A program made the position numbers and the translations under genes. From positions 1-64,000 of IMG/VR virus record IMGVR_UViG_3300050821_013430: a DNA stretch of 64,000 nt; one strand, given 5' to 3'. Shown piece after piece: positions 10,699 through 26,500 of the stretch. Position 1 is the stretch's first letter, and each line of letters starts with the position of its first letter. The notes beneath the pieces are model-generated. The model searched no databases. It was not told the origin of the DNA and saw nothing but the letters and a program-made list of their open reading frames with translations.

Positions 10699-10932
10699 TT
10701 ATCCTTGTTTAGTTTCATTTAGTTCATAATGATCAATTTGCGATACTCTAATGGCGACCATTATTCCAGCACACCAATCAGCTTTCATCAAAATGGCAGG
10801 TGAGAAGCCACTATCTTCTGCCATACCTAACTCACCTATAACGGCTTCAACATCGCCAATTAGGCAGCTACCATCAAATGTATGAACTCTGAGATTCTTA
10901 CCTTCTAATCCATCGAAATCTTGCTTTTGCAT
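10699..10932 (-). CDS. Small Sm/LSm-like beta-barrel protein
   Basis: LEGKNLRVHTFDGSCLIGDVEAV...AILM...VAIRVSQIDHYE. Confidence 0.55.
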   Translation of the reverse strand: MQKQDFDGLEGKNLRVHTFDGSCLIGDVEAVIGELGMAEDSGFSPAILMKADWCAGIMVAIRVSQIDHYELNETKQG

Positions 10933-11809
10933 TTACTTTCTCCTGTCTTGTTATATGTCTTGTTATATGTCTTGTTCTATTTGAACCTTCAATAATATTA
11001 AGTTTAGCCGAATATGGCCGCAAATTTTCGAGGGCCCAACATTTCTTGAAATTTTCCTCTTTCATATTTTTATATGGTAAATCGGATTGAGGAATGATAT
11101 GATCTAATTGCCAAGTCCAAGTCGAGGAGTCATTATCATCCCAAGTTTTAGCATTATATCGACCGTGATTTTCCCAAGTCATCCAAAAGTTTTTGTCTTT
11201 CCATTGGCTTTCGATATGAAAAGCTAGACTATCAGGAGTCCAATCCACAAAATCAAGAAAAGAATAATTATTTTTGGAAGAGCCTATTTTGTTCAGAGCG
11301 GCATTCACCATTCTTGAAATATTTACCCTGATTTTATATACTGGATCGTTCTTTTTCTTTTCTCTTTGCCATTTATTATAAGATTGTGTAATTTTCTCTC
11401 TATTATCTTCCCTGTATTGTTTTTTATATCGTTTTGTTCGTTCTCTAATTTGTGGCTGCGCGCGATACTTCTTATCTTTTGCAAGAATTTCTTCTTTATT
11501 ATTACTATAATATGTGCGTTTTCTTATACTAATATAGTTATTGTTTTCTTTCCTATATTCTTTATTATATTGATCTATCGATTCCTTATTTTCAGCATAA
11601 TATTCTTTTTTCTGTGTAATAATATTTTCACTGTTATGAGCATAATAATTTCTATTCTTGGCCAAAATAGTTAATTTATTTTTCTTATAGAAGGCCTGTT
11701 GATTTAGTGCAAGACATTCTTTACATTGACCGGTTAGCCTCCCGGTATCAGATCGAATTCTAAATTCACTATTTTCTTTGGTCTCTTTACACTGAATACA
11801 TTGTTTCAC
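10898..11809 (-). CDS. Free-standing HNH homing endonuclease (family copy 1)
   Basis: CxxC...CxxC, basic helical Y/K/E repeats, WTWQLDHIIPQS...KCWALENLRPYSAKLN. Confidence 0.85.
   Translation of the reverse strand: MKQCIQCKETKENSEFRIRSDTGRLTGQCKECLALNQQAFYKKNKLTILAKNRNYYAHNSENIITQKKEYYAENKESIDQYNKEYRKENNNYISIRKRTYYSNNKEEILAKDKKYRAQPQIRERTKRYKKQYREDNREKITQSYNKWQREKKKNDPVYKIRVNISRMVNAALNKIGSSKNNYSFLDFVDWTPDSLAFHIESQWKDKNFWMTWENHGRYNAKTWDDNDSSTWTWQLDHIIPQSDLPYKNMKEENFKKCWALENLRPYSAKLNIIEGSNRTRHITRHITRQEKVNAKARFRWIRR
10944..10976. repeat. 12-bp tandem repeat (tgtcttgttata, about 2.75 copies) in the HNH gene tail
   Basis: Visible directly; encodes TRHITRHITR. Confidence 0.8.
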
Positions 11810-11811
11810 TG

Positions 11812-13173
11812 TTATTTTCTCCGATCTACTACCGTATTCTGTACAAGTTTTCCAAACTGACTAGACTTTTGGGAAATACGATCCTTTATTTTTTGAGCGG
11901 CGGAAACATTTTCTTCGGTACCAGTTTCTAATTTGAGATTTAGATTACGAGTCTCGTCCTTGATTTTGGATTTTTGCACTAGTTCGCGGGCATCCTTTTT
12001 CAATTGATCTATTCTATTATCAGGAAGCGATAGTCCCGAAAACATTGAATATACTTTCACTACATTTTCTGGAATATCAACTTCATAAATTCCCTTGAAC
12101 ACTCCCTTTGGGGATGAACATAAATCATTTACCATTGCCATTGCATAATTTACACTAGAACTTGGAATTTCTTTCCAAACTTTAGCATTAGCTACGATGA
12201 TCGCTCCTACATATTTGGCTTGTTTCAAATCGAAACCACTAGCTAAAAGATTATTATTTAGATTATCAATCACGGCTTTTGCAATTGACACTTCATCCTT
12301 ATAGTCTGGCACTGTTAGCTCACCATAAACACTTAGTCCCTCACCATCGCACAAAAGTCTGGCAAACTCAGTAGGGTCTAATCCTTTTACGCTAGAGGGC
12401 ATTGCCGAAAAAGTATTGAAAACATCTAGTGGCTCTACAATAGTTTTGTTGGCTACTTGGAAAAATTCCATTTGAGAAACGCCACTTAGAATTGTTTCTA
12501 ACTTAGCATTATCAACGACAATAAGATTAGCGATCTTTTTGTCTCGAGCCATTCCTGCAAGCTTTGATAATGTTTCTAATGCATTAGCTTTTGTTTGCGT
12601 ATCATCTGAGTCCATCGGAAGAACCGTCAAAACTACCAGTGGTTTATTGGTTTCAGTAAGAATATCTACTAGAGTTTCACAAGAACCGGCCCCACTTCCA
12701 CCACCGAGCGATAGACACAAAACATTGACCTGAGAACGAAGCAACTTATCATTGATCATTTGCGCAATATCTGAACGGAAAGTCTCTGCAGCGGCTTTAC
12801 CAAATTCTAAATCTTTTGCTGCGCCACCGAGCCCATATTCTAACAATAACTTATTAGAATCTGGCAAATCAAGAAATTTTAGGTCTTGATTGGCGGTATT
12901 GATTGCTATAGCATCATATCCTAATTTAGAAAAGGAAACAGCAAGTCTCCCACCGGCTTGACCGCTTCCCACTACACCTAAGTTTAGACTTCGCTCTTTC
13001 TTTGCTACAATTTTCGCTGACATTCTCTGCTCCATTTGTTTTGCTTGACTTTGGGCCTTTAAGGCCACTAATTTACCGGCATCGACCGACGCAGGTTCGG
13101 AAACCTCAACGGTAGAAATATCATCCACTACTTGCTCTGGTGTGATTTCTTCGGTAATTGATTTTGCTGTCAT
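11812..13173 (-). CDS. Tubulin/FtsZ-family GTPase (PhuZ/TubZ-like)
   Basis: GVVGSGQAGGR (T1), AINTA, GGAAKD, signature SLGGGSGAG, VVDN, T7-like GLDPTEF. Confidence 0.88.
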   Translation of the reverse strand: MTAKSITEEITPEQVVDDISTVEVSEPASVDAGKLVALKAQSQAKQMEQRMSAKIVAKKERSLNLGVVGSGQAGGRLAVSFSKLGYDAIAINTANQDLKFLDLPDSNKLLLEYGLGGAAKDLEFGKAAAETFRSDIAQMINDKLLRSQVNVLCLSLGGGSGAGSCETLVDILTETNKPLVVLTVLPMDSDDTQTKANALETLSKLAGMARDKKIANLIVVDNAKLETILSGVSQMEFFQVANKTIVEPLDVFNTFSAMPSSVKGLDPTEFARLLCDGEGLSVYGELTVPDYKDEVSIAKAVIDNLNNNLLASGFDLKQAKYVGAIIVANAKVWKEIPSSSVNYAMAMVNDLCSSPKGVFKGIYEVDIPENVVKVYSMFSGLSLPDNRIDQLKKDARELVQKSKIKDETRNLNLKLETGTEENVSAAQKIKDRISQKSSQFGKLVQNTVVDRRK

Positions 13174-13184
13174 TTGTTTTCCTT

Positions 13185-13192
13185 TATATCGG
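13185..13192 (-). promoter_or_regulatory. SSGATATA motif (CCGATATA) upstream of the tubulin gene
   Basis: Same motif recurs in 8 intergenic gaps. Confidence 0.55.
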
Positions 13193-13202
13193 TTGAATCA
13201 AT

Positions 13203-13231
13203 AGTGTAATAAATAATAATTAGAGTGTCAA
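13203..13231 (-). promoter_or_regulatory. Sigma70-type promoter TTGACA-N17-TACACT
   Basis: Perfect -35, 17-bp spacer and 4/6 -10, in the gap upstream of the tubulin gene. Confidence 0.7.
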
Positions 13232-13242
13232 GAGGCATCAAT

Positions 13243-14169
13243 TTATTGTAATGCCCATCTGTTAGTCTCATACCAGCCAACAGTCTTTTCCAGCCGTTCC
13301 TTGAATTTCAATTTAGGAGTCCAATCCAAAGATTTAAGTTTGCTCCCATCCATACTATATCTAAAACCAACATCTGATTTTTCGGTAAAAGAAATCAAAT
13401 GATGTCCACGTCCTAAAATATTGCAAATATGATTGGCAATTTCTAAATTGGAAAATTCTTGCCCTGCCGAAAGATTGTATACCTGCTCTGAATGCTCTTT
13501 TTCTAAGACGGTAAAGAGGGCGGAACAAATCTCGGAAGTATGTAGCCAATCTCGTAATTCTAATCCTTGATTGTACAGGGTAATCGTGGTTTCATCCAAA
13601 ATACTCTTGATGGTATGAGGAATGAAACAATAACTACCCTGCCGAGGGCCAAATCCTTTAGCCAGCCTTACTATAAGGTATGGTAGATTTTGACTTTTTC
13701 CAGCGGCTTGTACCAAAAGTTCGGCCGCTGCTTGAGAGGCCACGAATTTAGTGATGGGAATCAATAAGTCATTTTCTTTGGAAGGATGTGCGTTTTCATC
13801 CGAAAGGCTTCCATATACTTTGCCAGTAGAAAGGTGAATCAATCTTTTTGTTTTCCATCTGAGGCAAGCATCAATAACTTTTTGAGTTCCCAATGCGTTA
13901 GTTTCAATAGCATCTTGCCCCTTAGAAAAAGCTCCGTGAATAACAATATCTGGTCGCTCATATTCAAAAAGAACATCCAAAAAATGTTCATCTAAAACAT
14001 TACCAATATAAAACTGATAATTTTTACTGACATAAAGATTACTAAGTGCTAATGAATTTTTCACTCTATCTACCCCAATAAAAGAATATGGAAGTTTATA
14101 GTGAATAGCTTTTCTTATTAGATTCTCGCATATAAAACTACCAGAACCCGTGATCAAAACTTTCTGCAT
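13243..14169 (-). CDS. dTDP-glucose 4,6-dehydratase (RmlB)-like extended SDR with degenerate catalytic motifs
   Basis: KVLITG...PDIVIH...TNALGT...LST.KVYG...FGPRQ...FIP...RDWLH...YNL...RYSMD.SKL..L.W.P...L.KTV.WY..N backbone. Confidence 0.8.
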   Translation of the reverse strand: MQKVLITGSGSFICENLIRKAIHYKLPYSFIGVDRVKNSLALSNLYVSKNYQFYIGNVLDEHFLDVLFEYERPDIVIHGAFSKGQDAIETNALGTQKVIDACLRWKTKRLIHLSTGKVYGSLSDENAHPSKENDLLIPITKFVASQAAAELLVQAAGKSQNLPYLIVRLAKGFGPRQGSYCFIPHTIKSILDETTITLYNQGLELRDWLHTSEICSALFTVLEKEHSEQVYNLSAGQEFSNLEIANHICNILGRGHHLISFTEKSDVGFRYSMDGSKLKSLDWTPKLKFKERLEKTVGWYETNRWALQ

Positions 14170-15200
14170 TAGAATCCTACGCTGATATTAGCCCCTAACA
14201 TTACATTGCCGGATGGATCAATTTGAACTGATGGTCCAACATAGGTATTATTTACTAATCCTTTTGGTAATAGGGCTCCGATATTATAATTAGCGGGATT
14301 GACAATCAAAGATACATTGTGCGTATCAGTCTGATAACTTGCGCCTAATTGCAAAAATGACCAGGAAGGGTTTGGTTTCGACTGCCCATAACTCATAATA
14401 CCTAGAGTTCCGCCCGCATTGAAAGAACCCGTTAGTGGCAGAGAGCTTACGCCTAATCCTCCCCCTGCAGTCATAAAGAGGCGAGGATTCCAAAAACTGA
14501 ATGAAGCTTGGGGATATTGTTGTAAAGTTTTAGAATTAGTGATTTTGACATCATAGCTTTTATTGGCCACTTTAATACTAAACTTATTGTAAATGGTTTC
14601 TCGTTCCTGATCATCTACACCGACGGTAGTGGTGACATCGTATTCTCGTGGCTGAATAGTGTATTGCCACGGTTTCTCTTGCCAAGCTGAGAAGCCAACA
14701 CTACCAAAAGGTATCGTAGTGCCATCACTAAACTGCTCATTCAATTGTAATGTTTGCGTATTATGCAAAAATCCAAATGGGTCAGGACAAGGTAACTGCT
14801 GTCCATTACAAGTAACAGTTTGCGGGGGAGGCTGAGAGTTTGGCGGGGCGGGTGTACTCGATGAGGAAGGAACATTAGTAGCTATTTGACCAGTACTATT
14901 TACCGTGGCCTCGTTGATGGCAGTAAGCTGTGCTCCTAGTTTTTCCATATCAGATTGAATAGTCGATAAATCCAAACTATTTTGTTTGGCGAAAGCAGCC
15001 AAATCATCCTTAGTAGCCCATTGTGACGAAGAACGAACAATATTGTCTTGTAATTGCTGCATTCCAACCATTTGGGTTTGGATAGCCTCTTGTTGAACAG
15101 TTACTTGATGTTGTTGCCATAAGATCACACCGATAGCAATAGCCAGAGCTATGAGCCCCGTATATACTAAAACTTTGGTCAATGTTGGGGGTATAGTCAT
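14169..15200 (-). CDS. Membrane-anchored protein, spanin-like architecture
   Basis: N-terminal TM helix, Q-rich coiled coil, Pro linker, C-terminal amphipathic beta strands ending in Phe. Confidence 0.5.
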   Translation of the reverse strand: MTIPPTLTKVLVYTGLIALAIAIGVILWQQHQVTVQQEAIQTQMVGMQQLQDNIVRSSSQWATKDDLAAFAKQNSLDLSTIQSDMEKLGAQLTAINEATVNSTGQIATNVPSSSSTPAPPNSQPPPQTVTCNGQQLPCPDPFGFLHNTQTLQLNEQFSDGTTIPFGSVGFSAWQEKPWQYTIQPREYDVTTTVGVDDQERETIYNKFSIKVANKSYDVKITNSKTLQQYPQASFSFWNPRLFMTAGGGLGVSSLPLTGSFNAGGTLGIMSYGQSKPNPSWSFLQLGASYQTDTHNVSLIVNPANYNIGALLPKGLVNNTYVGPSVQIDPSGNVMLGANISVGF

Positions 15201-15253
15201 TTATTCTTTCCTATAATAATGAAAGTCATAATTTAATCATGGTTCTAAAACTG

Positions 15254-16018
15254 TCAATCATTTTTCTTTTGATGGCGAGTTCGTCTAATGCCATCTAAAA
15301 TATTTTGTTTTGCGCTCAGTGGGCGAAGATTTTCTAATGCCCAGCATTTCTTAAAATCTTCATCTTCCATTGTTTCGTAGTGAAATTCTGAATGAGGAAT
15401 AATATGATCTATTTGCCAAGTCCAAGTGGAAGGATCATTATCATCCCAGGTTTTAGCATTATATATCCCATGATTTTTAAAATGCATCCAAACGTTCTCA
15501 CCGATCATCTGAGATGCTAAATGATTTAAAAACTCCTGAATTGTATAATCAAGATATTGAATACACGATTCGCCCAATTTAGAGCCACCATTTCTTTTAA
15601 GACCGTAATTAATTGCACTTGACATCAAACATCTAAAAGCGTAAGCAGGATCGTTTTTCTTGCGATCTCTTTCATATTTATTTTTCTGTTCGCGAATAAA
15701 TTCTTTATTTTCCTCTTTATATTTTTTATTATAGATGCTTATAGTTTCTTTATTTTCTTTACGATATTCAGCATATGCTTCTTTATTTTCTTTTTTGTAT
15801 TTTTTCGCGTAAATTTTACGGTCTTCGCTATTTACTTGATAATAATCTTTACCATATTGCCTAATATTTTCTTTATGCTTTTCATAATATTTTTTGTTCT
15901 TGGAATCATGACAATTTTTACAATTGTTTCTATATTTATTTGTATCTTTTCTGAAATAAAATTCATCTAATGATTTATTTAATCCACAAATACAACATTT
16001 TTTAATATTTTCTTGCAT
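15254..16018 (-). CDS. Free-standing HNH homing endonuclease (family copy 2)
   Basis: Start moved to MQENIKKCCICG (ATG 16018) to avoid overlap; WTWQIDHIIPHS...KCWALENLRPLSAKQN. Confidence 0.85.
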   Translation of the reverse strand: MQENIKKCCICGLNKSLDEFYFRKDTNKYRNNCKNCHDSKNKKYYEKHKENIRQYGKDYYQVNSEDRKIYAKKYKKENKEAYAEYRKENKETISIYNKKYKEENKEFIREQKNKYERDRKKNDPAYAFRCLMSSAINYGLKRNGGSKLGESCIQYLDYTIQEFLNHLASQMIGENVWMHFKNHGIYNAKTWDDNDPSTWTWQIDHIIPHSEFHYETMEDEDFKKCWALENLRPLSAKQNILDGIRRTRHQKKND

Positions 16019-16031
16019 TGTATGCCCAAAA

Positions 16032-17153
16032 TTATTCAAACGGAATTTGATCAACAATTTTAGACCAATCATAATGGTCACAGATATTCATTCGTTGTTT
16101 TTCAAGTTCAGCATTCAATAATGAAAAATCTGAATAAGCCTTTCTAAGTTGTTCTATCGCACTTTCCATGTTAGGCATAAACCATTTAGTGCCTCTTTTT
16201 TGTTCCCAATACATACTGGTGGGTTCCGCCTCCACTTCATCACCTTCAATAAGTAATGAGTTATCGGTAGTAAGGAAATCTTTTTGACCGCCATAGTTGG
16301 GACATATATTAACTTTACCGGAAGCGAGACCCTCTAATCCCGGAATATAAAAACACTCTGTATGACTCATAGTAAATACTGCGTCAATACTTCGATATAG
16401 AACAGATATATCATCTATATAATTAGTTATTAACTTTACTTCGGCGTGTTTGGGAAACTGTTTATAAAACGAATTTAAATATTCATTTAAATCTATATCG
16501 AATGTTTGAACGGCTCTTTTAGGTCGTGCCTTTAAAAGTAAACAAACATCATCATCTATTGTAAATGCTTTTCCATAAGCAGTTAATAGTCCAGAAATAT
16601 TTTTTCTCTTATGATTTTGTGCGATATTAGATAGTATTTTAAATTTTTTTTTGGTGGGGAGACTGATAGTCGTGGCTTGTCCAAACTGAGCGCCATTAAT
16701 CCCATGTGAGAGTACTTGCATTTTATTTTTAGGAACACCAGAATTAGCAAATGTTTCCATAGATGATTCAGATGGTGGTAATAATGTATCGCAATATACG
16801 TGCTGTTGAGCAAATCCTGTTGGTAAAGCATTCACTCCGGCCCACTCGTATGACCAAATACCAAAACGATTTTTTTTACTGTGCGAAAGATATCGAGAAA
16901 AATTTTTCATGCAGGTATAACTAATACACGCGTCATAATTAGGGCCCGGCTGATTTCCATACATTTTCCCACTTGGATTACCATCACTATATCCAATTAA
17001 ATATGGCATTAAATCTCGTGGTAAATGATCTATGCCATCGGTAGAGTATAACTTTACATCATGTTGTTTTTTAAGTAGGGCGCGGGCCATTTCTCTACCG
17101 ATCACTCCCCAACTATGATTGGCTCCTAAAAATTGTCTAATTAATATTTTCAT
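16032..17153 (-). CDS. GT-B glycosyltransferase (GT4-like)
   Basis: HKRKNI, SHTECFYIPGLEGLASG (Ex7E), NYGGQKDF, YDW at the C-terminus. Confidence 0.82.
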   Translation of the reverse strand: MKILIRQFLGANHSWGVIGREMARALLKKQHDVKLYSTDGIDHLPRDLMPYLIGYSDGNPSGKMYGNQPGPNYDACISYTCMKNFSRYLSHSKKNRFGIWSYEWAGVNALPTGFAQQHVYCDTLLPPSESSMETFANSGVPKNKMQVLSHGINGAQFGQATTISLPTKKKFKILSNIAQNHKRKNISGLLTAYGKAFTIDDDVCLLLKARPKRAVQTFDIDLNEYLNSFYKQFPKHAEVKLITNYIDDISVLYRSIDAVFTMSHTECFYIPGLEGLASGKVNICPNYGGQKDFLTTDNSLLIEGDEVEAEPTSMYWEQKRGTKWFMPNMESAIEQLRKAYSDFSLLNAELEKQRMNICDHYDWSKIVDQIPFE

Positions 17154-17162
17154 GATATTAAC

Positions 17163-20100
17163 TTAACCAGCATTAATCGCTGGTGCAAGCCCAAGTAAAT
17201 TGCTTATCTGTAATTGATCCACAAACAGCGGTGTATTCTTAAATCCTGATTTTTTCAAATAAACTATGATTTCGACCTTGGTTGAAAGTGAAAGAATAGT
17301 TGGGTCTGTATATATGTATGCGAAGTCCAAACGCAAAATACCTGTATTTGGATCAATGTAGCACCCCCAACGATCATCGGCAAGAATGCCCTGATAACCA
17401 TCAATACTGACACCATTTAAATTGGGTGAGAGTGCTTGCAAACTAACCGCAAATTTGACACGCCCCAATTCTAAATCGAGGGGCTGTACAAAACTACAGT
17501 CAGAATATCTCACTGCCGGATAGCCGAGACGAGTTATTCCCGTTCCATTATGATCTGATACAAATGTATCGAATATATTTACATTGACTTCTTGACCAAG
17601 AAAAGTATTAGGTATTTCGAGTGTGATAACCTGTGTCTCAAAATCGACAGCATAATTTGATCCATCTGGATTAACAATTTCTCCACCGTTTCCGATAATC
17701 AAATTATTGGGAACATAAACATCGATGCGCCCTGGATCAAAATCCGCAGGAATGGGATATGTTTCGCACTGATTTCCTACCAATGAACAATTATTGATTA
17801 CAAATCCGGTTGGAGTTGTGAAAACTGTTGGAACATATCTCGCATCACCACTTACTACAATGCGGGAAGCGTCCCAAGTAAGTTCTTTGATAATATTGAA
17901 TGCGACTGGATGATCCAAGAAATCGTGATTTTCGAGAGTACCGCCAGTGTATCCATCGAGAGTAAAAATATCTGGTAATGTATGAAGTGTAGTGGCTCTA
18001 TTTCCCGCTTCATTAAGAAAATCATCTGTTCTATCTGGAATTGAATTGGGTATATCTTTATATAGAAAAGGCTCTACTGTTAATGCAATAACATTGAATC
18101 GGGTCCCAATTCTATTTTCCGGAGAAGAAACGGGCGGAAAAGGCGGAGAACGATTTACATAACTTTGTAATAAGTAGCCATCATTTGAATCGACAATAAA
18201 GTCAGCATCAATATCGGCTCTCAGAATTTGACCCATTGTGGAAGCGTTAAGATAAAGTTTTCTAATATCAATGATATGATTACTAGTAATATCTAATGCT
18301 TGAATGAAGAAAGAGCCATTATTTTGTTGGTCTGGTGAGCTAAAAATTACCAAATTGAGATTAGTGAGGTTGGTAACGGTACTAAAATCAATAAACAAAC
18401 TTTCGAAAGAAGCCAATGAGCCATCATTGGGATTAACGGTTAGAATGCCATCAAAACCTGATGCGATTACGTTTGTAGTATTAGGATCGACTAATTGAAA
18501 TGATAAACCAGAATCATTAGTGAATGCATTTACATAAGCATTATAACCATTGATGACGGTAGTATTAATACCATTAGTAGTAATTTGAGAGTTTAGCGGT
18601 GGAGAAGAATTGAGATTAAAGCCAATCAAATTATTGAGAGCTACTACATCATTTTCATCAACAATGCCATCATTATTAACATCGCCATACATCATTGAAC
18701 AAAGAGTTGCGCTTGAGATTCTATAAAATACTGAGGAATCGGAAGCGTCCGGGACAATTTGGGCTCCGGCAAAAGCCCCATTGACAAAATCAGTTACCAG
18801 TGCCAAAACACTGGGATCATAGCGATAACCATCCGTCACATCATCAATAATTTTGATAAAGATTTGATTCTTGAAAAAAGTCCAAGCGTGCAAAGCAGAA
18901 GAAATAGTAGAAGTAGCAATATTATACGATTTGACATTTCCATCTTCGATTATACCAATTGAAAGTGGTTCGGTTGTCGTTTGAAGACTGGAAAAATCAA
19001 GTGGATTTAATAATTGTACAGAAGGGATAAACTCTTGACGAGAATTAATAAGATTACCGGTTCTTTGATCTTGCACCGGCACACTTTGCTGTAGAGTAGC
19101 GGAAAGGACGCTTGTAAAAACATCATTACCAAAAAATGAAACAGCATTAAGAGCAAAATCAGATTGGGCGCCAGTTATTGGGTCAGGGGCAGTTTTAGGA
19201 ATGATTATTCCTTGACCGGTATCATAAGCTTGTCCATCAGAAACTTTGGCTGCATCCGTCCAAACCTGAAACCATAGATTACTTTCTAGAATATCTACCC
19301 AACTAGTACCAGTAAAAGTGGTAACCCATGAATTACTAATTAAAGTTGCGCCAGTGCTAATTAGAATATCACACTGATTAGCTGCGCCAGATCGTTTGAC
19401 TGTAGCCGCATAATAACCACCAGGTTTAATGGCGCTACCATTAGCTATTTGAGTATTGCTAAAAATAAAATCAATGGGCTGAGGGTTACCATCCAACAAA
19501 ATCCCAGCTTGTTGTAATGTATTATAGTTAAAACTAATTTGAGCTAATGGAATATTAGAAGGAGGAAAATTGATAGCTAAATTAGGAACTATGTCAGTAG
19601 GACATTGTATTGCTGATTGTAATGGATAAATACTAATTACCAAATCACCTTGCCAAACTAAATTAGTACTCTGGCCAGGAGCGGTGTTTTGCACCGAAAG
19701 TAGAAGAGTTAATTTTTGGATATTATTAGTGGTGGCTAAAAATTTCTCTCCAATTTGAGTAGTAACATCGTTAGCGGCAATAACAAGATTTTCCTTAATC
19801 GCTGTAAAGATATTAAGGCTATCAGTATTGTAGAGGGGGAGTGAGGCCGCTAAGAAAGTTCCTAAAGTACTACCGTTGGCTACGAAAAAATCTCTGAAAA
19901 ATAAATTAGGTTGCAGGGCCTGCGAAACCATAATAGGATCTCTGGACAAAGAAACCGGAAGTGCTTCTTTGATAACGACTCGTCCACCTAAATTAAGAGA
20001 TTGGGTAGCGGAACCAACAAAATCATTGAATAAAATAAGCAAAATGCTAGTATAATGTTTAGAAGAAATTTGAGTATCATTTTGATCAAAAACAAAAGTA

Positions 20101-20456
20101 TCAAATTGTAAGTTACTTTGGAAGTCTAATCCAATAATGGCTATTTTAACTGTTCGTCTCCCGGCCGCAAGTGAGCCGGTTAATTGAATTGAAAGCTGAG
20201 CACCGAGATTAGAATCGATTGGTTGATTTTGGGCCGATACGGCAACACCATCCAAAAGTCCCGTAGTCAGAGAGGAGTCAAAAATAACATTTTGGCTTAG
20301 AGAATTAGGCAGAATACCAGAGCCAATTTGGTTATTGATAAGGCTACTTTGCCAAGCATTATTAAAATTTTGCTCAGTAGTCAGATCATCATCTGTCACC
20401 TGTTCGGAGTCGAACCAAACATTTTGAATTGTGGTAACTGGGCTGCGCTTAGTCAT
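17163..20456 (-). CDS. Large virion/baseplate-associated protein with dockerin-like Ca-binding repeats
   Basis: Beta-rich N/T/S composition; YGDVNNDGIVDENDV and RADIDADFIVDSNDG; follows baseplate genes. Confidence 0.65.
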   Translation of the reverse strand: MTKRSPVTTIQNVWFDSEQVTDDDLTTEQNFNNAWQSSLINNQIGSGILPNSLSQNVIFDSSLTTGLLDGVAVSAQNQPIDSNLGAQLSIQLTGSLAAGRRTVKIAIIGLDFQSNLQFDTFVFDQNDTQISSKHYTSILLILFNDFVGSATQSLNLGGRVVIKEALPVSLSRDPIMVSQALQPNLFFRDFFVANGSTLGTFLAASLPLYNTDSLNIFTAIKENLVIAANDVTTQIGEKFLATTNNIQKLTLLLSVQNTAPGQSTNLVWQGDLVISIYPLQSAIQCPTDIVPNLAINFPPSNIPLAQISFNYNTLQQAGILLDGNPQPIDFIFSNTQIANGSAIKPGGYYAATVKRSGAANQCDILISTGATLISNSWVTTFTGTSWVDILESNLWFQVWTDAAKVSDGQAYDTGQGIIIPKTAPDPITGAQSDFALNAVSFFGNDVFTSVLSATLQQSVPVQDQRTGNLINSRQEFIPSVQLLNPLDFSSLQTTTEPLSIGIIEDGNVKSYNIATSTISSALHAWTFFKNQIFIKIIDDVTDGYRYDPSVLALVTDFVNGAFAGAQIVPDASDSSVFYRISSATLCSMMYGDVNNDGIVDENDVVALNNLIGFNLNSSPPLNSQITTNGINTTVINGYNAYVNAFTNDSGLSFQLVDPNTTNVIASGFDGILTVNPNDGSLASFESLFIDFSTVTNLTNLNLVIFSSPDQQNNGSFFIQALDITSNHIIDIRKLYLNASTMGQILRADIDADFIVDSNDGYLLQSYVNRSPPFPPVSSPENRIGTRFNVIALTVEPFLYKDIPNSIPDRTDDFLNEAGNRATTLHTLPDIFTLDGYTGGTLENHDFLDHPVAFNIIKELTWDASRIVVSGDARYVPTVFTTPTGFVINNCSLVGNQCETYPIPADFDPGRIDVYVPNNLIIGNGGEIVNPDGSNYAVDFETQVITLEIPNTFLGQEVNVNIFDTFVSDHNGTGITRLGYPAVRYSDCSFVQPLDLELGRVKFAVSLQALSPNLNGVSIDGYQGILADDRWGCYIDPNTGILRLDFAYIYTDPTILSLSTKVEIIVYLKKSGFKNTPLFVDQLQISNLLGLAPAINAG

Positions 20457-20501: not shown

Positions 20502-23500
20502 TCATCTTGTATAGGTTATGAAAGCGCTCGAATTGGCTGGTTTCAGGATTTCTACCAAGGCCTCAAGTACATTTTGTGCTTGTGGATTCTCAAGTAATAT
20601 ATCGAATGAATCGAACACATCGATTGTAAAATCAAATGATCCATTTTTTAATAGAACAGCAAAGTCTTGGTTTAGAGTAACTAAGGTATTGAAATCTAAC
20701 AATAAAGTAGTGTAAAGGTCTTGGGTAACCGGGAATACTACATTCAAATTACTATTGTAATTGACATCAATTGATTCTCCAAACGGAATAAATAGGGGTC
20801 TAGCGATATCGCTAATCCTAAAATTATCAATCAATGCAAACGCAGGATTTTGTCCGTTGAATTGGCTTCCTAAGTATAACTCATTGAAAGTATCCTTAAA
20901 GTTTATTTCAGCAGCAATACCGCCAATTCCAAGAGTTGTGGCCCCAGCGATGTGGGGGTCTCCAAAAAGTAATCCACTACCGAGGGTTAAGTTGCCTCGT
21001 TCATACCCATCTATGAAAAGCCGAATTTCATCATTAGTAGTACCGCTATTGAAACTATAGGTGGCCTTGACTCGATGCCAAGTGCCCTGAGACCAGAAAG
21101 TCTGACCGCGTAATTTATATTCAATTCCACTAGCCATTACACTAAAATTGACATAGCCAAATGGGTCTTTATAAATGGAAATCCTATCACCTTGTAGTCC
21201 ACTAGGAATATAACTAACTATTACTGGCATATTTTGGGACGGTAGTCTTTTCTTGAGTCTGATAACCTGTCGATTAAGGGCTTTGTTGGCCGCACTTGTT
21301 GGTTTATAGATAACTACTACCGGCAAACTGGCCTGTGGTAATGTAACATCTAGGAAGATGGTATGACCATCCGTTCCGATTGCGCCTTTGTTGAAATAAT
21401 TAGTACCACTTGGGTCTCCAATGATTTTAACTGATATTACTTGTAAAATAGATTGAGAAACAATAACGGTATTAGTATTGAGGCTGGTTGTATTTTCTGA
21501 AATGGCACCAGAAGTATCAAATCCTACACTTCCACCATCAAAATAATCAATTGATTGATCGCCGTGTTGCAATTTAACACTTAATACTCGTCCAACATCT
21601 CCGACTACTTGTACAGCAGTATCATTAATGCTAACTACATTTTCAATAGTAATGCCGCTAGCATCAAAATAATATCGATAGTTAGGATCATTTCCAGTAT
21701 CGAAAATTGGATTGACCCAAAATTCAATAGTCCCTTGTTGTTTAGTATTCAATATCCCGGCATTGTCAATTACTAATGGTTTATCAGTAATATAAACACT
21801 CTGATTAAAATTACTATTGACACTAAATCCAGCCTGCACAAACCCAGTGTTCTGACTAATTACATAATATCTCGCATCATTAGTAAATGGAAAAGTATCA
21901 AAAGTGGTTAGCATTACTGTATTAATGTCATCTTTCAATGGTTTTAATGAATTGAAATCCTTAGTGATAGATTCCTGAGAACTCGGAATTGTTTCTCCGA
22001 CACGGGTATCAGTTAGTTTGATAGAACTGCTCTTTAGAGCGTCAATTAGCCCATCAAATACATTATTACTATTGAAATCAGTACCTAAGAAAGCGTCCTT
22101 GTTAATGGGATCAAGTTTTACGGAAAGGTAAGTATAATAATCAAAATCATAGCGACCCCTGGCTAATGGGTAAGGTTGTCCTGGCGTCAATGCTTGTTCA
22201 AAGAAAAAGAATCCGCTTTGGAAACCACTACGAAAATCACTAGCATTCAATATTTGATAAAATCCACTACTGAACGCTGCCAGCGGGGTGGCTAGTGTTA
22301 GACTATGGTGATCGGCTGAAACTCCAGTAATTTGATAAGTGCCCGCTACCGCAAGCGGTGTTGAGATAACCAAATAATTATTGATATCTGGGGAACTGAA
22401 AAAACTATTTGGGTCAGTAACCACGTTTGTTCCGGAACCGATTAGAGTAGTGCCAGCATCAATTTGATAACTGTACTTAATAGTAGGATAATCGGCATTA
22501 CTATTTTCTGGTACGGTAATAGAAAACTCTTCTTCGACAAACAGAGTCATAAAGGCTTTGGATGTATTATTAGCCATACCACTAACTATTATCGAATTGA
22601 TTCCGGCATATTTATTAACACTATTTTGTGTGCCAAGAGAAGTAAAAGTGATTGTTTCGCTGGAAGGATTTCCGTTGATAGTTACAGAAACTGGTGTGGA
22701 GAAGTTTATATTGTTAGTGCTATTGATTGTAACAGATAAGGTTCGTCCATTGATTGATGTAGATGGTTGATCCGTAGTCAAAGCATTAGAGGTAAAATTA
22801 TTAAGTATCAAAGTAGAATTAGATGAATTGATAATTGTGATGGGAAGGATTTCGTGAAATACATTTACACCCGCTAAGGCTACTGGGATTGGTAAATGAG
22901 TGGCGATAACAGTGCTTCCGCCACTAACGGTTCCGCCGGTACTCATAGTGCCAGTTCCACCAGTACAGCCAGTAAAAATATTGGAAGTAAGACCAGTGTA
23001 AGATACTAATTGAAATCCTTTGTTAGTAAAAACATAAAGTGAGCCAGATGTTGGGAATCCGGCAGTAGATACAACATGGATAGTGGCTTGTGGCAATGTT
23101 TGTCCGTTAGAGCCAACATCAATGGTAGTATCGCCACCCCATTGATAATAGGGTTGTCTTATTCTTCGATGATTGATCCCAAGAGTAATTATATGGATCA
23201 GATCATTGGTATGAGCGTTGTTTGTAATAGTAAGAATATTATTGAAGTTAGCGTCTTTAGTCAAAGTGTAAGACGGATTAACTGCTCGCAGTCCGGGGAT
23301 TTCGACCGGGGTATTGGGATAGACATGGAAAACTGCGTTATTCAATGTTAGGGAAACGGCACTATCCAAAGTCAATGTGTTACCAGAGACTGCCAAGATA
23401 TTGTAATGTGATTGTAAAGTGGGATTTCCATCAATTCGCAGCAAATAACCAGGCACTATGCCGTGAGCAGTAAAATTTATAGAGGCCGAGGATACGGTAG

Positions 23501-26500
23501 CGCTTCCACTTATAGTATTGAGATCGCTTCCATTTAGAGTGGCGCTTATCGTAGAAATCGCAAAATTAGGAAATATATCGATTTCGGTTTGAACAATAAA
23601 AGAAGTTGGATTAACTGAAAATTTACCATTAGTAATAGAAGAAGGCATTGCAGTATTAAGAATAAGGGTTTGTCCCAATACTGTCAAAACCGTATAACCA
23701 CCAGGCGCAAAGCCAGGCTCATTGATAAAAATTGTTGCAGGGGCAACAACACCATATTGATCAAAATTGATGGAAGAAGAAACGCTAGCGGAGCCTGCCG
23801 TGGTAACTAAATCAGTAGAAGATACAACACCATTGGTAATGACTCCGGCAATTTCTTCCGGATCAACAGTACGGAAAAGTTCATGAGGATAAGGCCCAAT
23901 TCTACTACCATACTTTATGATATTGGGTACCTCAAATCCGTCAATGAAAAGATGCAATTCATCTCTTCCATTTTTGGAGTTTAGAATCCAAGACGCGGCG
24001 ACGTGATGGAGATCGTTTATTCTCCATTTAGAAACATCGGCACTGACCGAATAGGCCCGACCGCCATTGTCATACACTCTAAAATTGAAATATCCACTAG
24101 GATCTTTATAAAGGGATAATCGATTTTTATTTTTGTCGATTCCAAAATCTAATAGATAATGATCGAAATCTGCTAGAAAAGTCGCAGCAACATCTAATGG
24201 GACAGGGCCCCTGAAAACAAAAGTAGCCGTACTAATGCCTGATGTGATTTGCAAATCCACAGGTTGTGGTGAAACCACCGATCTTACATCATAAAATTTA
24301 CCATCAGTAGTGATTTTGATATTGTAAATAGTAGAATAACCATCGCTATATCCGTCAGAATAACCATCTACCACTTCTAAATACCAACGATTGAATAATC
24401 CGCTGGCATCGGGCGCATAATAAAGATAAACTCCATCTTTATTTAGATTTGGCAATCCTTGAACTTCTTGTCTTTTATTGGTGGTGAAAGAATTAGAGAT
24501 ATTATATTGGGGATGGTTTTCTGCTGCACCTAGAAAAATCTGATCGGATGGAATTGGAAGTCCATCTTTGGTAATAGTAACAGTCAAATCAGCGTCATTA
24601 TCTAACCCATTCCAATGAGGAGAAACCCAAGTTTGGAAGCTGCCTTGTTCAATTCTCAAATTAGAAGAAGCCGGGAAAGTAATTGTTTGTCCCAACGTAT
24701 CAACTAATACGCCATTACCAAATTTGGCCGGGAGAAGCTGTAAAATGCCGGTAGTTTCGATGGCTCTTGGATTTAACAAACTAGATCCTAAAGACCAATT
24801 TTGGAAAATAGATTCAGTGATCTGCGGCTTGACATGCGAAATTTGTTCTACCAAATTAGTCATCGCTGTTACTGTTGGGCCCTGCAAGAAAGAAGAGAGG
24901 GCCGCACTAAGCGCATCTCGGTATCGCTCTCTGGGTAAATTGATATCCACACTAGTGAGAGCTGGTACATTGATAAGAGAGCCAAAATTATTGATTAGAG
25001 CATTTCGTAATGCGCCAACTTTATAGGTAACATAGTAGACATCATTAGTAGAAACCGTTTCAGATTGTCGAAAATCAATTACATTATCGCCATATTCATA
25101 ACTGATTTCAATTTCATCTGCTAAATAAGTATAATCGATAAAAAGGTCTCCCTTGTTGTAATCTACAATTGCTCTAGAAAGAGCATTGATGGATAAAGTA
25201 TAATTTACCGCCACGGCATCACCAGTTTGTGGTGCATTGGCGCCAGAAAGAATTAATCTTACTCCGTTGCCTAAAACGATAGTACCAGGAATGCTCCAAA
25301 GATTAGCGCTATCTGAAAGACGAACAACATTAACAGTTAGCGTAACATTAGGAGAAAGATATGGTAAATTAAGATTAGTTTGGACATAGTGATTAGTTCC
25401 ATCAAATTCGACCGTGGTATATTGTTGTAAATTGACCGGAGCCAGAGTAATAGTTTGTCCAGAAAAAGTAGCCCCTGATACAAAATTGAAAGGAGTTGTA
25501 CTATTTTTTAGATCATCAAACTCAAAAATGCCACGGATAAAATTGATAGCGTTTGATACTCCTGGAACAAATACTGCCCCCGTGGTGAAAACACCAATTT
25601 GTTGATTAAAAATTTCATAAGGAGCACCAATATTACCGTTGAGAAGAGTTTCATCAGAGGGATCTAAACTTGTTGGTAAGATAAAACCATCTCCAAAATC
25701 AACAAATGTAAAATGCTTATTTTTTGGATTTAATAAACTAATACGGTAGTAGATATCATCAACACTAATAAGATGAGGATTTTGTGGCACGATATTACTA
25801 TTTTTATAACTAATCGTTCCAATGCTAAGGCTTTGACCTATACTAACTGCCACGTAAACAACACCATTTAAATAATCTATTTGATACAGGCCAATTTTGC
25901 TTAGACGCGCGACATTGAGAGTTTCAGTTTCATTTTCATCAAACCATATTTCATTTTGGAAAATATTGGAATTGGAAAAATTTACAGTGCTATTAAGGGA
26001 AAATCCGATACCATCGGCGGTGGCATTTGTTAAACTATTGTTGCTGAGAAAAATCTTGAAAATAGATAGTCCGCCCGTATTAGTTAAAGTTTGATTAACA
26101 AAGAGTAATTCATTTAAAACATCCTGAAAAGAAACTCTTTCTCCCGTTAATTGAGTAATGTTAGGGGGAGTATTATAAGTAAAATAAACAGTATTTTCGT
26201 TCCATCGTAATAGATTATATACTTCTCCGGATGTCTGATTGAAAATTCTAAATACATCAGTGACGGGGCCATTGAGTGTCATAAGTGCGTTTAGTGCTAC
26301 TAATCTATTTTCTATACTTTCAGATAAAGATTCTAAATGCACTTCAGCGCGATAATCAGTACCGGGTATTAAAACTTGTTCATAGTTAAAAGTGATTGTA
26401 GCTGAATTGTTTAGCAAGTTACCAGTCGGAATTGGTGCCACATCATTCGGGGTGGGGTCATAAGCGTAATCTAAATTATTTTGATAAGTAAAAAGATAAT

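What the first reader, a model, noticed from the sequence alone, without database searches (positions are those of the whole stretch)
13243..14169. RmlB-like dehydratase with all catalytic motifs replaced but an intact reading frame
Seen, compared with canonical dTDP-glucose 4,6-dehydratase: the NAD-binding TGGAGFIG is TGSGSFIC, STDEVYG is STGKVYG, and the catalytic YxxxK (YSASK) is FVASQ. The rest of the 308-aa scaffold is conserved and uninterrupted. Inference: a retained pseudoenzyme, perhaps a nucleotide-sugar binder, a partner of the glycosyltransferase, or a dominant-negative subunit that poisons host RmlB dimers and alters surface polysaccharide.
Basis: partly seen in the sequence, partly recalled or inferred. 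Interest (0 to 1): 0.65.

Follow-up and report, generated by a model that had tools for sequence, protein, structure and literature searches.

The report
Dead RmlB-like enzyme kept by huge phage
A soil huge phage carries a sugar-dehydratase look-alike that has lost its catalytic and cofactor-binding residues but is still kept by selection, so it probably has a non-catalytic job that is not yet known.

Summary
Window 13243-14169(-) is an open 308-aa ORF with an RmlB fold (AF2 pLDDT 95; TM 0.94 to PDB 6bi4). It reads TGSGSFIC, STGKVYG and FVASQ where RmlB has the glycine motif, the Asp/Glu acid-base pair and YxxxK. About 8 residues of the NAD loop are also deleted.

The host is a 472.7-kb soil virus record. 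The gene lies between a tail-fibre/glycosyltransferase cassette and a TubZ-like tubulin gene. An RmlB-like gene sits upstream of tubulin in 74 of 75 related huge-phage loci. About two thirds of these copies are catalytically intact.

This copy belongs to a five-member clade that lost the catalytic residues stepwise. The clade is still under purifying selection: ML omega about 0.05, omega=1 rejected, all ORFs open. Constraint has moved off the catalytic core and stays on the N-terminus and the C-terminal domain.

An intact paralogue sits at 76 kb in the same genome.

"Retained pseudoenzyme" is well supported. What the protein does is not shown. My best guess is a non-catalytic nucleotide(-sugar)-binding or scaffold partner of neighbouring gene products. 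Poisoning of host RmlB is disfavoured.

The parts
13243..14169 (-). RmlB-like extended-SDR pseudoenzyme gene, 308 aa
   Evidence: ORF. Pfam PF01370 3.5e-34. Best PDB sequence match 2hun, 2.4e-40. AF2 pLDDT 95.3, pTM 0.92. Foldseek top hit RmlB 6bi4, TM 0.94.
14128..14151 (-). Degenerate glycine motif TGSGSFIC (residues 7-14)
   Evidence: The intact family consensus is TGSGGFIFSN, so this copy carries G11S and F14C.
13912..13938 (-). HGAF plus a shortened beta4-alpha4 loop (residues 78-86). About 8-9 residues of the ESxVDxS NAD-binding loop are deleted.
   Evidence: Alignments. Loop length is 12 here against 20 in intact members.
13810..13830 (-). STGKVYG (residues 114-120). The Thr133 equivalent is kept, the Asp134 equivalent is Gly, and the Glu135 equivalent is Lys.
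   Evidence: Residue roles come from PMC9415975 and PMC8987622.
13732..13746 (-). FVASQ in place of YxxxK (residues 142-146)
13645..13662 (-). AKGFGP in place of SNNYGP (residues 170-175). The Asn196 equivalent is lost. Phe173 is fixed in all five clade members.
   Evidence: PMC9415975.
13246..13659 (-). C-terminal (substrate-binding) domain, residues 171-308. It is as conserved within the clade as in intact relatives and keeps R206, N232, R270 and Y271.
14169..15200 (-). p343: 343-aa protein with an N-terminal hydrophobic helix, a long helix and a beta-rich C-terminal part. Its TAA stop overlaps the ATG of the RmlB-like gene (TAATG).
   Evidence: No Pfam, PHROG or fold match. Syntenic.
11812..13173 (-). 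TubZ/PhuZ-like tubulin gene, 70 nt downstream of the RmlB-like gene
   Evidence: Pfam Tubulin 5.1e-12 and TubZ-like_C. PHROG PhuZ. The pairing is conserved.
16032..17153 (-). GT4/GT1-type glycosyltransferase of the cassette
   Evidence: PHROG 2170, 4e-23. Weak Pfam hits. Syntenic.
17163..20456 (-). 1097-aa protein of the conserved cassette; likely a tail fibre or surface protein
   Evidence: Synteny. A faint Dockerin_1 hit in the ortholog. It lies after the baseplate wedge gene. The fibre role is inferred from position only.
20502..27833 (-). 2443-aa Laminin_G_3-domain protein; first gene of the conserved cassette
   Evidence: Pfam PF13385, 4e-13. Synteny.
15254..16081 (-). 275-aa ORF inserted between GT4 and p343; paralogue of 10898-11809. 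It carries an HNH-like motif as read by eye and is absent from the syntenic loci.
   Evidence: No Pfam hit. Other contigs of the same sample match parts of it.
10898..11809 (-). 303-aa paralogous ORF inserted just downstream of the tubulin gene

Best explanation
The gene encodes a catalytically dead descendant of a phage nucleotide-sugar 4,6-dehydratase, kept as a protein for a non-catalytic role.

SHOWN
- It has the RmlB fold.
- It is the positional ortholog of an RmlB-like gene that sits between a tail-fibre/glycosyltransferase cassette and a TubZ-like tubulin gene in a lineage of huge phages (about 0.1-0.48 Mb contigs).
- Most orthologs keep the [ST]DE...Yx3K signature.
- In a five-member clade that includes this phage, the Glu became Lys and the NAD loop shortened first. 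Then the Asp was lost. Then Tyr and Lys were lost at least twice independently.
- The clade is under purifying selection. Constraint has been lifted from residues 76-170 (cofactor loop, catalytic strand, YxxxK helix) and kept on residues 1-30 and the C-terminal domain.
- The same genome has an intact paralogue at 75978-76940.

INFERRED
- The protein cannot oxidise or dehydrate sugars and probably no longer holds NAD.
- It most likely acts through its preserved C-terminal nucleotide-diphosphate-binding domain. It would be a non-catalytic nucleotide(-sugar)-binding or scaffold partner of products of the same gene block: GT4, p343, or possibly the tubulin.

Confidence is about 0.85-0.9 for 'dead enzyme retained under selection' and about 0.35 for the binder/scaffold mechanism. 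The overall figure below is a blend of the two.
For: - Motifs and fold.
- None of the nucleotide-sugar SDR signatures in PMC8987622 Table 1 is matched. Residue roles are in PMC9415975.
- Synteny GT4-p343-RmlB-like-tubulin holds in all five clade members, in the sister group, and in intact orthologs.
- Tree: the clade has 100% support, and P0002, which keeps Y and K, is nested inside it.
- Selection: ML omega is 0.053, against 0.034-0.037 for intact orthologs. 2dlnL is 547 against omega=1 and 269 against omega=0.5. Neutral simulation leaves 291 codons open in 0.8% of runs at d=0.1 and in none at d>=0.2.
- The only population variant seen is synonymous.
- The conservation profile is inverted relative to intact orthologs.
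- 48 of 90 family-invariant columns are kept, including D34, D60, R206, N232 and R270. New clade-wide residues appear: Y173F, V211T, D213E, E117K.
- Intact paralogue.
- Degenerate copies tend to lack the GT2 genes of the cassette (Fisher p=0.0018).
Against: - No binding or activity data exist.
- dS is saturated, so absolute omega values are unreliable. A pairwise estimate from 4-fold sites allows omega up to 0.3-0.6.
- Keeping 3 of 4 nucleotide-contact equivalents is only weakly better than chance, because 48 of 90 conserved columns are kept overall. The Asn196 equivalent is lost.
- The clade has only five members.
- The GT2 association is not corrected for phylogeny.
- The AF2 model rests on an alignment dominated by intact enzymes, so it says nothing about ligand binding.
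Confidence: 0.6

Rival explanations
1. The tubulin-adjacent RmlB-like proteins moonlight as partners or regulators of the phage TubZ-like tubulin. They may couple filament behaviour to nucleotide-sugar or redox state. The dead copies would keep only this second role.
For: - An RmlB-like gene lies upstream of tubulin on the same strand in 74 of 75 evaluable tubulin loci and in 72 of 80 RmlB-like loci, even where the GT, p343 and p1097 genes are not detected.
- 31 of 86 unique adjacent copies are degenerate, yet the gene is essentially never missing.
- RmlB-like distances correlate best with tubulin distances (Spearman 0.81).
- No terminator-like site lies between the two genes.
- Precedents exist of sugar or redox enzymes and enzyme homologs controlling FtsZ: UgtP, OpgH, KidO, GdhZ (PMC7794046).
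Against: - Adjacency may simply mark a conserved boundary between the tail and replication modules.
- Most copies look like working enzymes.
- Few residues are specific to the tubulin-adjacent type.
- There is no physical evidence of any kind.
Confidence: 0.12
2. It is a non-catalytic subunit that pairs with one of the phage's own intact SDR paralogues, like the inactive subunits of heteromeric SDRs.
For: - The genome has four other PF01370 genes, including an intact RmlB-like paralogue.
- Inactive SDR partner subunits are documented: PhBS-beta and BbsCD (PMC13418739).
Against: - The helices that form the RmlB dimer interface (assignment from my own knowledge of RmlB structures) fall in residues 96-113 and 147-170. 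Within the clade these are only 0.41-0.47 identical, against 0.74-0.81 in intact sets. Three members also carry a 4-residue deletion there.
- The paralogues are encoded more than 60 kb away.
Confidence: 0.12
3. It is still an enzyme that uses non-canonical residues, for example Thr115 and Lys117 in the manner of PglF-type dehydratases, or it catalyses a different reaction.
For: - TDK...Mx3K enzymes work without the Tyr (PMC8987622).
- Thr115 and a Lys at the Glu position are present.
- Clade member P0002 keeps Y, K and Gly11.
Against: - The Asp is Gly and the triad Lys is Gln.
- The NAD loop is deleted, and HGAA has become HGAF.
- The former catalytic region is the least conserved part of the protein within the clade.
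Confidence: 0.07
4. It is a decaying relic with no function, left over after the cassette lost its GT2 partners.
For: - Loss of catalytic residues goes with absence of GT2 genes.
- Branches in the clade are long, with a stem of 0.82.
- It is only 53% identical to its counterpart in L004, while the flanking genes are 79-91% identical.
Against: - Five diverged lineages all keep open frames of 296-312 aa.
- omega=1 is rejected, and the neutral simulation gives P<0.01 even at d=0.1.
- New clade-specific invariant residues have appeared.
Confidence: 0.05
5. It is a dominant-negative subunit that poisons host RmlB dimers.
For: - The RmlB fold is retained.
- The phage has no RmlA or RmlC of its own, so host nucleotide-sugar pools matter to it.
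Against: - It arose in place from a phage enzyme inside a phage cassette.
- The interface helices are poorly conserved.
- Sister phages carry active versions at the same position.
- The host is unknown.
Confidence: 0.04

Closest known systems
dTDP-glucose 4,6-dehydratase (RmlB/RfbB; e.g. PDB 2hun, 6bi4, 1g1a/1keu)
   Same: Same two-domain extended-SDR fold (TM 0.91-0.94). 25-32% identity over the full length. The Thr133, Arg231 and Asn266 equivalents are kept.
   Different: The Asp134, Glu135, Tyr and Lys equivalents are Gly, Lys, Phe and Gln. The Asn196 equivalent is lost. The NAD loop is shortened by about 8 residues.
Tubulin-adjacent RmlB-like proteins of related huge phages (e.g. P0044 on a 467-kb contig; the sister group P0007/P0017/P0021)
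   Same: 42-54% identity, the same gene position, and the same family signature around the glycine motif and the C-terminus.
   Different: Most keep STDEVYG, YSASK and the full loop. The sister group has SDDK plus YxxxK and a partly shortened loop, an intermediate state.
Intact paralogue in the same genome (G000 75978-76940, minus strand)
   Same: 39% identity and the same family.
   Different: All motifs are intact. It sits in a sugar-modification cluster with a Gfo/Idh/MocA protein, a C-methyltransferase, a cupin and two more SDRs. It is not next to the tubulin gene.
Inactive SDR subunits and atypical SDRs (PhBS-beta, BbsCD subunit; NmrA-type proteins, the last from my own knowledge)
   Same: An SDR fold kept after loss of catalytic-tetrad or cofactor residues, used for structural or regulatory roles (PMC13418739).
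   Different: Those belong to classical or NmrA-type SDR families in cells. This one derives from an extended nucleotide-sugar SDR in a phage. No NmrA-family Pfam hit was found, and no partner is known.
Metabolic proteins that regulate FtsZ (UgtP, OpgH, KidO, GdhZ)
   Same: Sugar-nucleotide-binding or NAD(H)-binding enzymes or enzyme homologs acting on a tubulin-family protein (PMC7794046). Here an enzyme homolog is encoded beside a tubulin homolog.
   Different: They have unrelated folds. No interaction has been shown here. This is an analogy only.

Membership tests
Extended SDR / NAD-dependent epimerase-dehydratase superfamily (PF01370) | Sequence match above the curated cut-off, and a two-domain Rossmann plus substrate-domain fold | tested here: met
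   118.7 bits against a cut-off of 20.9. AF2 model TM 0.94 to RmlB 6bi4.
dTDP/UDP-glucose 4,6-dehydratase (RmlB) | [ST]DE acid/base motif on the catalytic strand | tested here: not met
   The motif reads T-G-K (STGKVYG). Signature from PMC8987622 Table 1.
dTDP/UDP-glucose 4,6-dehydratase (RmlB) | Yx3K catalytic dyad | tested here: not met
   FVASQ.
dTDP/UDP-glucose 4,6-dehydratase (RmlB) | Tightly bound NAD+: the glycine motif, the HxAA-ESxVDxS loop, and Asp residues contacting adenosine | tested here: inconclusive
   D34 and D60 are kept. Against binding: G11S, A81F, D57N, the triad Lys lost, and about 8 loop residues deleted. Binding itself was not measurable.
dTDP/UDP-glucose 4,6-dehydratase (RmlB) | Conversion of dTDP-glucose to dTDP-4-keto-6-deoxyglucose | not testable with these tools
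   Needs an enzyme assay.
Other nucleotide-sugar SDRs (GalE [ST]..Yx3K; CDP-Glc or UDP-GlcNAc dehydratases [ST]DK..Yx3K; GMD [ST]SE..Yx3K; PglF TDK..Mx3K) | One of the catalytic signatures listed in PMC8987622 Table 1 | tested here: not met
   TGK...Fx3Q fits none of them. Some relatives (STDKVYG plus YxxxK) do fit the DK type.
Pseudoenzyme (catalytically inactive homolog that is retained) | Clear homology to an enzyme family, with the essential catalytic residues missing | tested here: met
Pseudoenzyme (catalytically inactive homolog that is retained) | Maintained by purifying selection rather than decaying | tested here: met
   omega 0.053. omega=1 rejected (2dlnL 547). Five open orthologs in conserved synteny. 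Neutral simulation. Caveat: dS is saturated.
Pseudoenzyme (catalytically inactive homolog that is retained) | Demonstrated lack of activity | not testable with these tools
   Needs biochemistry.
NmrA-like / atypical SDR regulators | Sequence membership in the NmrA-type family | tested here: not met
   No NmrA-family hit among the Pfam matches. The resemblance is functional analogy only.

The most novel reading that the evidence does not exclude
In this lineage of huge phages, the RmlB-like protein encoded directly upstream of the TubZ-like tubulin has a second, non-catalytic function tied to the phage cytoskeleton. It would be a metabolite-sensing partner or regulator of the tubulin, analogous to UgtP, OpgH and KidO acting on FtsZ. 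This would explain why the gene is practically never lost although its catalytic residues have died independently many times. The window's protein would be a pure 'moonlighting-only' form.
Probability: 0.12. Interest if true: 0.8.

Novelty: new variant of a known kind. Interest (0 to 1): 0.5.

Why it matters
Pseudoenzymes are well documented in cells but rarely in phages. I found no RmlB-derived one in my searches; these did not cover the literature exhaustively.

This case comes with a natural series: intact, intermediate and dead orthologs at one conserved genomic position. That makes it a good system for studying how an enzyme fold is repurposed.

It also exposes an unreported, near-obligate gene pair (RmlB-like plus tubulin) in uncultured huge phages. 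If the pairing is functional, it would link sugar-nucleotide metabolism to a phage cytoskeleton.

For annotation, such genes are currently labelled 'dTDP-glucose 4,6-dehydratase'. About a third of the tubulin-adjacent copies lack at least one of the canonical features scored (the Asp/Glu pair, Tyr/Lys, or the full-length loop), although the few Asp-Lys variants may still be active.

Tried and rejected
- **Complex prediction, tubulin plus RmlB-like:** score 0.00, verdict 'no answer'. Pairs with GT4, p343, the intact paralogue, or a homodimer could not be tried.
- **Phage collection:** the megablast of the region and the tblastn of the tubulin found nothing. The tblastn of the protein found only relatives of 31% identity or less. 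No cultured relative is available.
- **Pairwise dN/dS:** NG86 and YN00 failed because dS is saturated. I replaced them with 4-fold-site counts and ML codon models.
- **Whole-record searches:** the records behind L004, L005, L008 and L009 are not held. I could not ask whether other clade members also carry an intact paralogue.
- **Clade profile search:** no further clade members were found.
- **p343:** no Pfam or PHROG family. The Atlas gave only viral hypothetical clusters and low-TM beta-barrel look-alikes. The AF2 model (pLDDT 78) has no PDB match.
- **Promoter and terminator scan:** counts were not above the shuffled expectation. I used it only to note that no terminator-like site lies between the two genes.
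- **Reads:** contigs only and no RNA run, so there is no expression evidence and almost no population variation.
- **Tubulin single-protein locus search:** it found one locus. I repeated it with a profile.
- **The search of protein representatives:** not used, because the claim does not rest on absence of relatives.

Full report
**1. Observation**

One search lists an ATG ORF at 13243-14169 on the minus strand, 308 aa. It contains TGSGSFIC (residues 7-14), STGKVYG (114-120) and FVASQ (142-146); positions are.

Pfam assigns it to the NAD-dependent epimerase/dehydratase family (PF01370, 3.5e-34). The best solved relatives are dTDP-glucose 4,6-dehydratases (2hun 2.4e-40, 6bi4 5.8e-40). The printed alignments place the three strings opposite TGGMGFIG, STDEVYG and YSATK. 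They also show a gap of about 8 residues where RmlB has AAESHVDRS.

An AlphaFold2 model built on 107 family sequences is confident (pLDDT 95.3, pTM 0.92). It superposes on RmlB structures with TM 0.91-0.94.

Published residue roles are as follows:
- Thr133, Asp134, Glu135, Asn196, Arg231 and Asn266 contact dTDP-glucose, and Glu135 removes the C5 proton (PMC9415975).
- The signatures of all known nucleotide-sugar SDRs are [ST]DE, [ST]DK or [ST]SE with Yx3K, plain [ST]..Yx3K, or TDK..Mx3K (PMC8987622 Table 1).

The window protein reads T-G-K ... F-x3-Q and fits none of them.
- The Thr is kept.
- Part of the unusual glycine motif is ancestral to the family.
- The scaffold carries a loop deletion and further replaced motifs: SNNYGP to AKGFGP, and DRxGHD to EKSDVG.

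**2. Genome and surroundings**

The window is the first 64 kb of a 472,749-bp virus record. Near-identical DNA occurs in soil metagenomes from at least two studies.

Every ORF of 180 aa or more in the window is on the minus strand. Upstream in reading direction lie a tail sheath gene (51710-54520) and a baseplate wedge gene (27833-31939). After them come:
- a 2443-aa Laminin_G_3 protein;
- a 1097-aa protein;
- a GT4/GT1 glycosyltransferase;
- a 343-aa protein of unknown fold, whose TAA stop overlaps the ATG of the RmlB-like gene;
- the RmlB-like gene itself;
- 70 nt later, a TubZ/PhuZ-like tubulin gene.

No terminator-like site separates the last two genes.

Two paralogous ORFs (15254-16081 and 10898-11809) interrupt this order. 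They are absent from the syntenic loci of relatives.

The genome has four further PF01370 genes and no RmlA or RmlC. One of them, at 75978-76940, is a 39%-identical paralogue with every motif intact: TGSAGFIFSN, HGAAESFVDDS, STDEIYG and YSASK. It sits in a cluster with a Gfo/Idh/MocA protein, a C-methyltransferase, a cupin and two other SDRs.

**3. The family**

A word-based search of 5.8 billion proteins found 120 relatives at 32-52% identity. Many are on contigs of 0.1-0.47 Mb, and where a source named them it was as dTDP-glucose 4,6-dehydratase.

Their consensus is TGSGGFIFSN ... HGAAESxVDxS ... STDEVYG ... YSASK. In my alignment:
- 66 of 117 keep Asp-Glu and Tyr-Lys;
- 29 have lost Asp or Glu only;
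- 21 have lost both the Asp/Glu pair and Tyr or Lys.

One further protein keeps Asp-Glu but lacks Tyr.

On a maximum-likelihood tree these states are scattered. Well-supported branches force at least six origins of the Tyr/Lys-less state.

Some 'Asp-Lys' variants (STDKVYG plus YxxxK) match the signature of CDP-glucose and UDP-GlcNAc dehydratases and may well be active.

**4. A conserved position next to tubulin**

Contigs encoding clade members and other relatives all show the order: large Laminin_G_3 protein, roughly 1100-aa protein, GT4, sometimes GT2 genes, p343-like protein, RmlB-like, tubulin. A GH25 lysozyme (absent from one of the loci), a helicase and DnaB follow.

- Among 80 IMG/VR loci found with a family profile, 72 have the tubulin gene downstream.
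- One further locus ends at the contig edge.
- Five of the remaining seven are second loci that resemble the intact 76-kb paralogue, and all five are intact.
- Starting instead from a tubulin profile, 74 of 75 evaluable loci have an RmlB-like gene upstream on the same strand.

Among 86 unique tubulin-adjacent proteins, 55 are fully intact and 31 are degenerate in at least one feature. Loss of catalytic residues goes with loop shortening.

Degenerate copies tend to lack the GT2 genes of the cassette: 3 of 18 have them, against 16 of 24 intact copies. Fisher p is 0.0018, not corrected for phylogeny.

**5. The clade of the window protein**

The protein groups with P0002, P0005, P0039 and P0092 (100% support, stem length 0.82). 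This clade is sister to P0007/P0017/P0021.

The order of events follows by parsimony:
1. The eight-member group already has Lys at the Glu position and a shortened loop.
2. The five-member clade further lost the Asp and more of the loop.
3. Tyr and Lys were then lost separately in the window lineage and in the P0092/P0005/P0039 lineage. This follows because P0002, nested between them, keeps YVASK and Gly11.

A profile search with the five sequences found no further members (509-546 bits for the five, 331 for the next hit).

**6. Is it retained?**

All five genes are open (296-312 aa) and in the same context.

- Pairwise dS is saturated.
- At 4-fold sites of identical residues, the window/L004 pair has d=1.40 in this gene. 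The values are 0.69-0.70 in p343 and p1097 and 1.03 in tubulin.
- This explains the odd fact that the flanks are 79-91% identical while this gene is 53% identical. The region is mosaic, and the flanks were exchanged more recently. It also bounds omega at roughly 0.3-0.6 for that pair.
- A codon model on the five genes gives omega 0.053. Intact orthologs give 0.034-0.037, tubulin 0.025-0.036 and p343 0.054-0.086.
- Fixing omega at 1 or 0.5 costs 2dlnL of 547 and 269.
- Simulated neutral change leaves 291 codons open in 0.8% of runs at 0.1 substitutions per site, and never at 0.2 or more.
- The one variant seen in other samples is synonymous: F219 TTT to TTC.

Decay without function is therefore very unlikely, although absolute omega values are soft.

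**7. Where the constraint sits**

In intact orthologs, residues 76-170 are the most conserved part (0.74-0.84 pairwise identity). This stretch holds the cofactor loop, helix 4, the catalytic strand and the YxxxK helix. In the clade it is the least conserved part (0.30-0.47).

Residues 1-30 and 211-308 are about as conserved as in intact sets: 0.58-0.67 against 0.59-0.75.

Of 90 columns that are at least 90% conserved in intact members, 48 are kept in at least four of the five clade members. These include D34 and D60 (adenosine contacts) and R206, N232, R270 and Y271 (equivalents of the pyrophosphate and ribose contacts).

Thirty columns are lost. They include G11, A81, the loop, D116, E117, Y142, K146, N171, N172, K181, H267 and D268.

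Several positions have a new clade-wide residue: Y173F, V211T and D213E in all five, and E117K and N172L in four.

This pattern fits a protein that has given up catalysis, and probably the nicotinamide half of the cofactor site, but still needs its C-terminal domain.

**8. Mechanism**

The shown part ends there. The rest is inference.

My preferred reading is a non-catalytic nucleotide(-sugar)-binding or scaffold protein that works with products of the same gene block.
- The GT4 gene is the only neighbour whose divergence tracks the RmlB-like gene specifically: Spearman 0.70, against about 0.42 for GT4 versus the other genes.
- p343 is translationally coupled to the RmlB-like gene.
- Tubulin is the most faithful neighbour (Spearman 0.81).

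The rivals are listed separately with probabilities.

The tubulin idea is the most novel. It rests on the near-obligate pairing, on repeated catalytic death without gene loss, and on precedents of metabolic proteins regulating FtsZ (PMC7794046). A complex prediction gave no answer.

A pairing with the phage's intact paralogues has precedent in heteromeric SDRs (PMC13418739). It is weakened by the poor conservation of the interface helices. The same fact, together with the in-place origin of the gene, argues against poisoning of host RmlB.

**9. Novelty and score**

Jumbo phages are known to carry one to four epimerase/dehydratase paralogues with glycosyltransferases (PMC7824862). SDR pseudoenzymes are also known. 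An RmlB-derived phage pseudoenzyme, with a graded series of orthologs at a fixed position beside a tubulin gene, did not turn up in my literature searches.

I rate it a new variant of a known kind, interest about 0.5. The family-wide RmlB-like/tubulin pairing is the more surprising by-product.

Noticed in passing
window 11812-14169, and loci L011-L170: The gene pair 'RmlB-like then TubZ-like tubulin' is near-obligate in this lineage of uncultured huge phages. It holds in 74 of 75 tubulin loci and 72 of 80 RmlB-like loci, with gaps of 9-2046 nt. It holds even where the upstream cassette genes are not detected.
   Followed up: partly
proteins P0002-P0120; loci L004-L170: About a third of the tubulin-adjacent RmlB-like copies (31 of 86 unique) have lost Asp/Glu, Tyr/Lys and/or part of the NAD loop. 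This happened in several independent lineages. Variants reading STDKVYG plus YxxxK match the CDP-glucose/UDP-GlcNAc dehydratase signature and may be active enzymes with another substrate.
   Followed up: partly
L083:8720-10699 (same contig as L128): One ortholog is a 660-662-aa ORF. The epimerase domain is split after HGAAES by an insert of about 340 aa that ends in HN followed by Thr. The insert has a sub-threshold Intein_splicing hit (E 1.5e-5). It looks like an intein in the NAD-loop of an RmlB-like gene.
   Followed up: partly
window 10898-11809 and 15254-16081, minus strand: Two paralogous ORFs (303 and 275 aa) are rich in Cys near the N-terminus and Lys/Asn-rich in the middle. They share a C-terminal motif WTWQ-DHIIP...NLRP-SAK-N that looks HNH-like by eye. 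They are inserted into the conserved cassette and are absent from the syntenic loci. Other contigs of the same soil sample match parts of one of them. They are probably homing-endonuclease-type mobile genes, but there is no Pfam hit.
   Followed up: partly
window 14169-15200, minus strand: p343 is conserved across the lineage and 90% identical in L004. The AF2 model shows a long N-terminal helix with a hydrophobic start, a Ser/Pro-rich linker, and a beta-rich C-terminal part ending in Phe. It has no family and no significant fold match. Only weak, unreliable resemblance to outer-membrane beta-barrels was seen.
   Followed up: partly
window 11812-20456 compared with L004: The divergence is mosaic. 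The 1097-aa protein and p343 are 90-91% identical (4-fold-site d about 0.7). Tubulin is 79% identical (d 1.0). The RmlB-like protein is 53% identical and GT4 38% (d about 1.4). This suggests recombination breakpoints at gene borders inside the cassette.
   Followed up: partly
genome G000 74.5-82.9 kb (L002, L003, L095), outside the window: A second sugar-modification cluster holds the intact RmlB-like paralogue, a Gfo/Idh/MocA oxidoreductase, a C-methyltransferase that appears split over two ORFs, a cupin and two more SDRs. In its midst lies a fusion of a response-regulator receiver domain with a dual-specificity phosphatase domain (L002:2427-3338).
   Followed up: no
window 1-64000: All 34 ORFs of 180 aa or more are on the minus strand, and no tRNA gene was found. 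The window runs from a tail module (sheath, baseplate wedge, several proteins of 1300-2400 aa) into a replication module (tubulin, then the helicase and DnaB seen in relatives).
   Followed up: no
L008:20613-20936 (470-kb relative): The precomputed annotation of a related huge phage shows a ribonucleotide reductase large subunit with a LAGLIDADG_3 hit. This suggests an intein or homing endonuclease there too.
   Followed up: no
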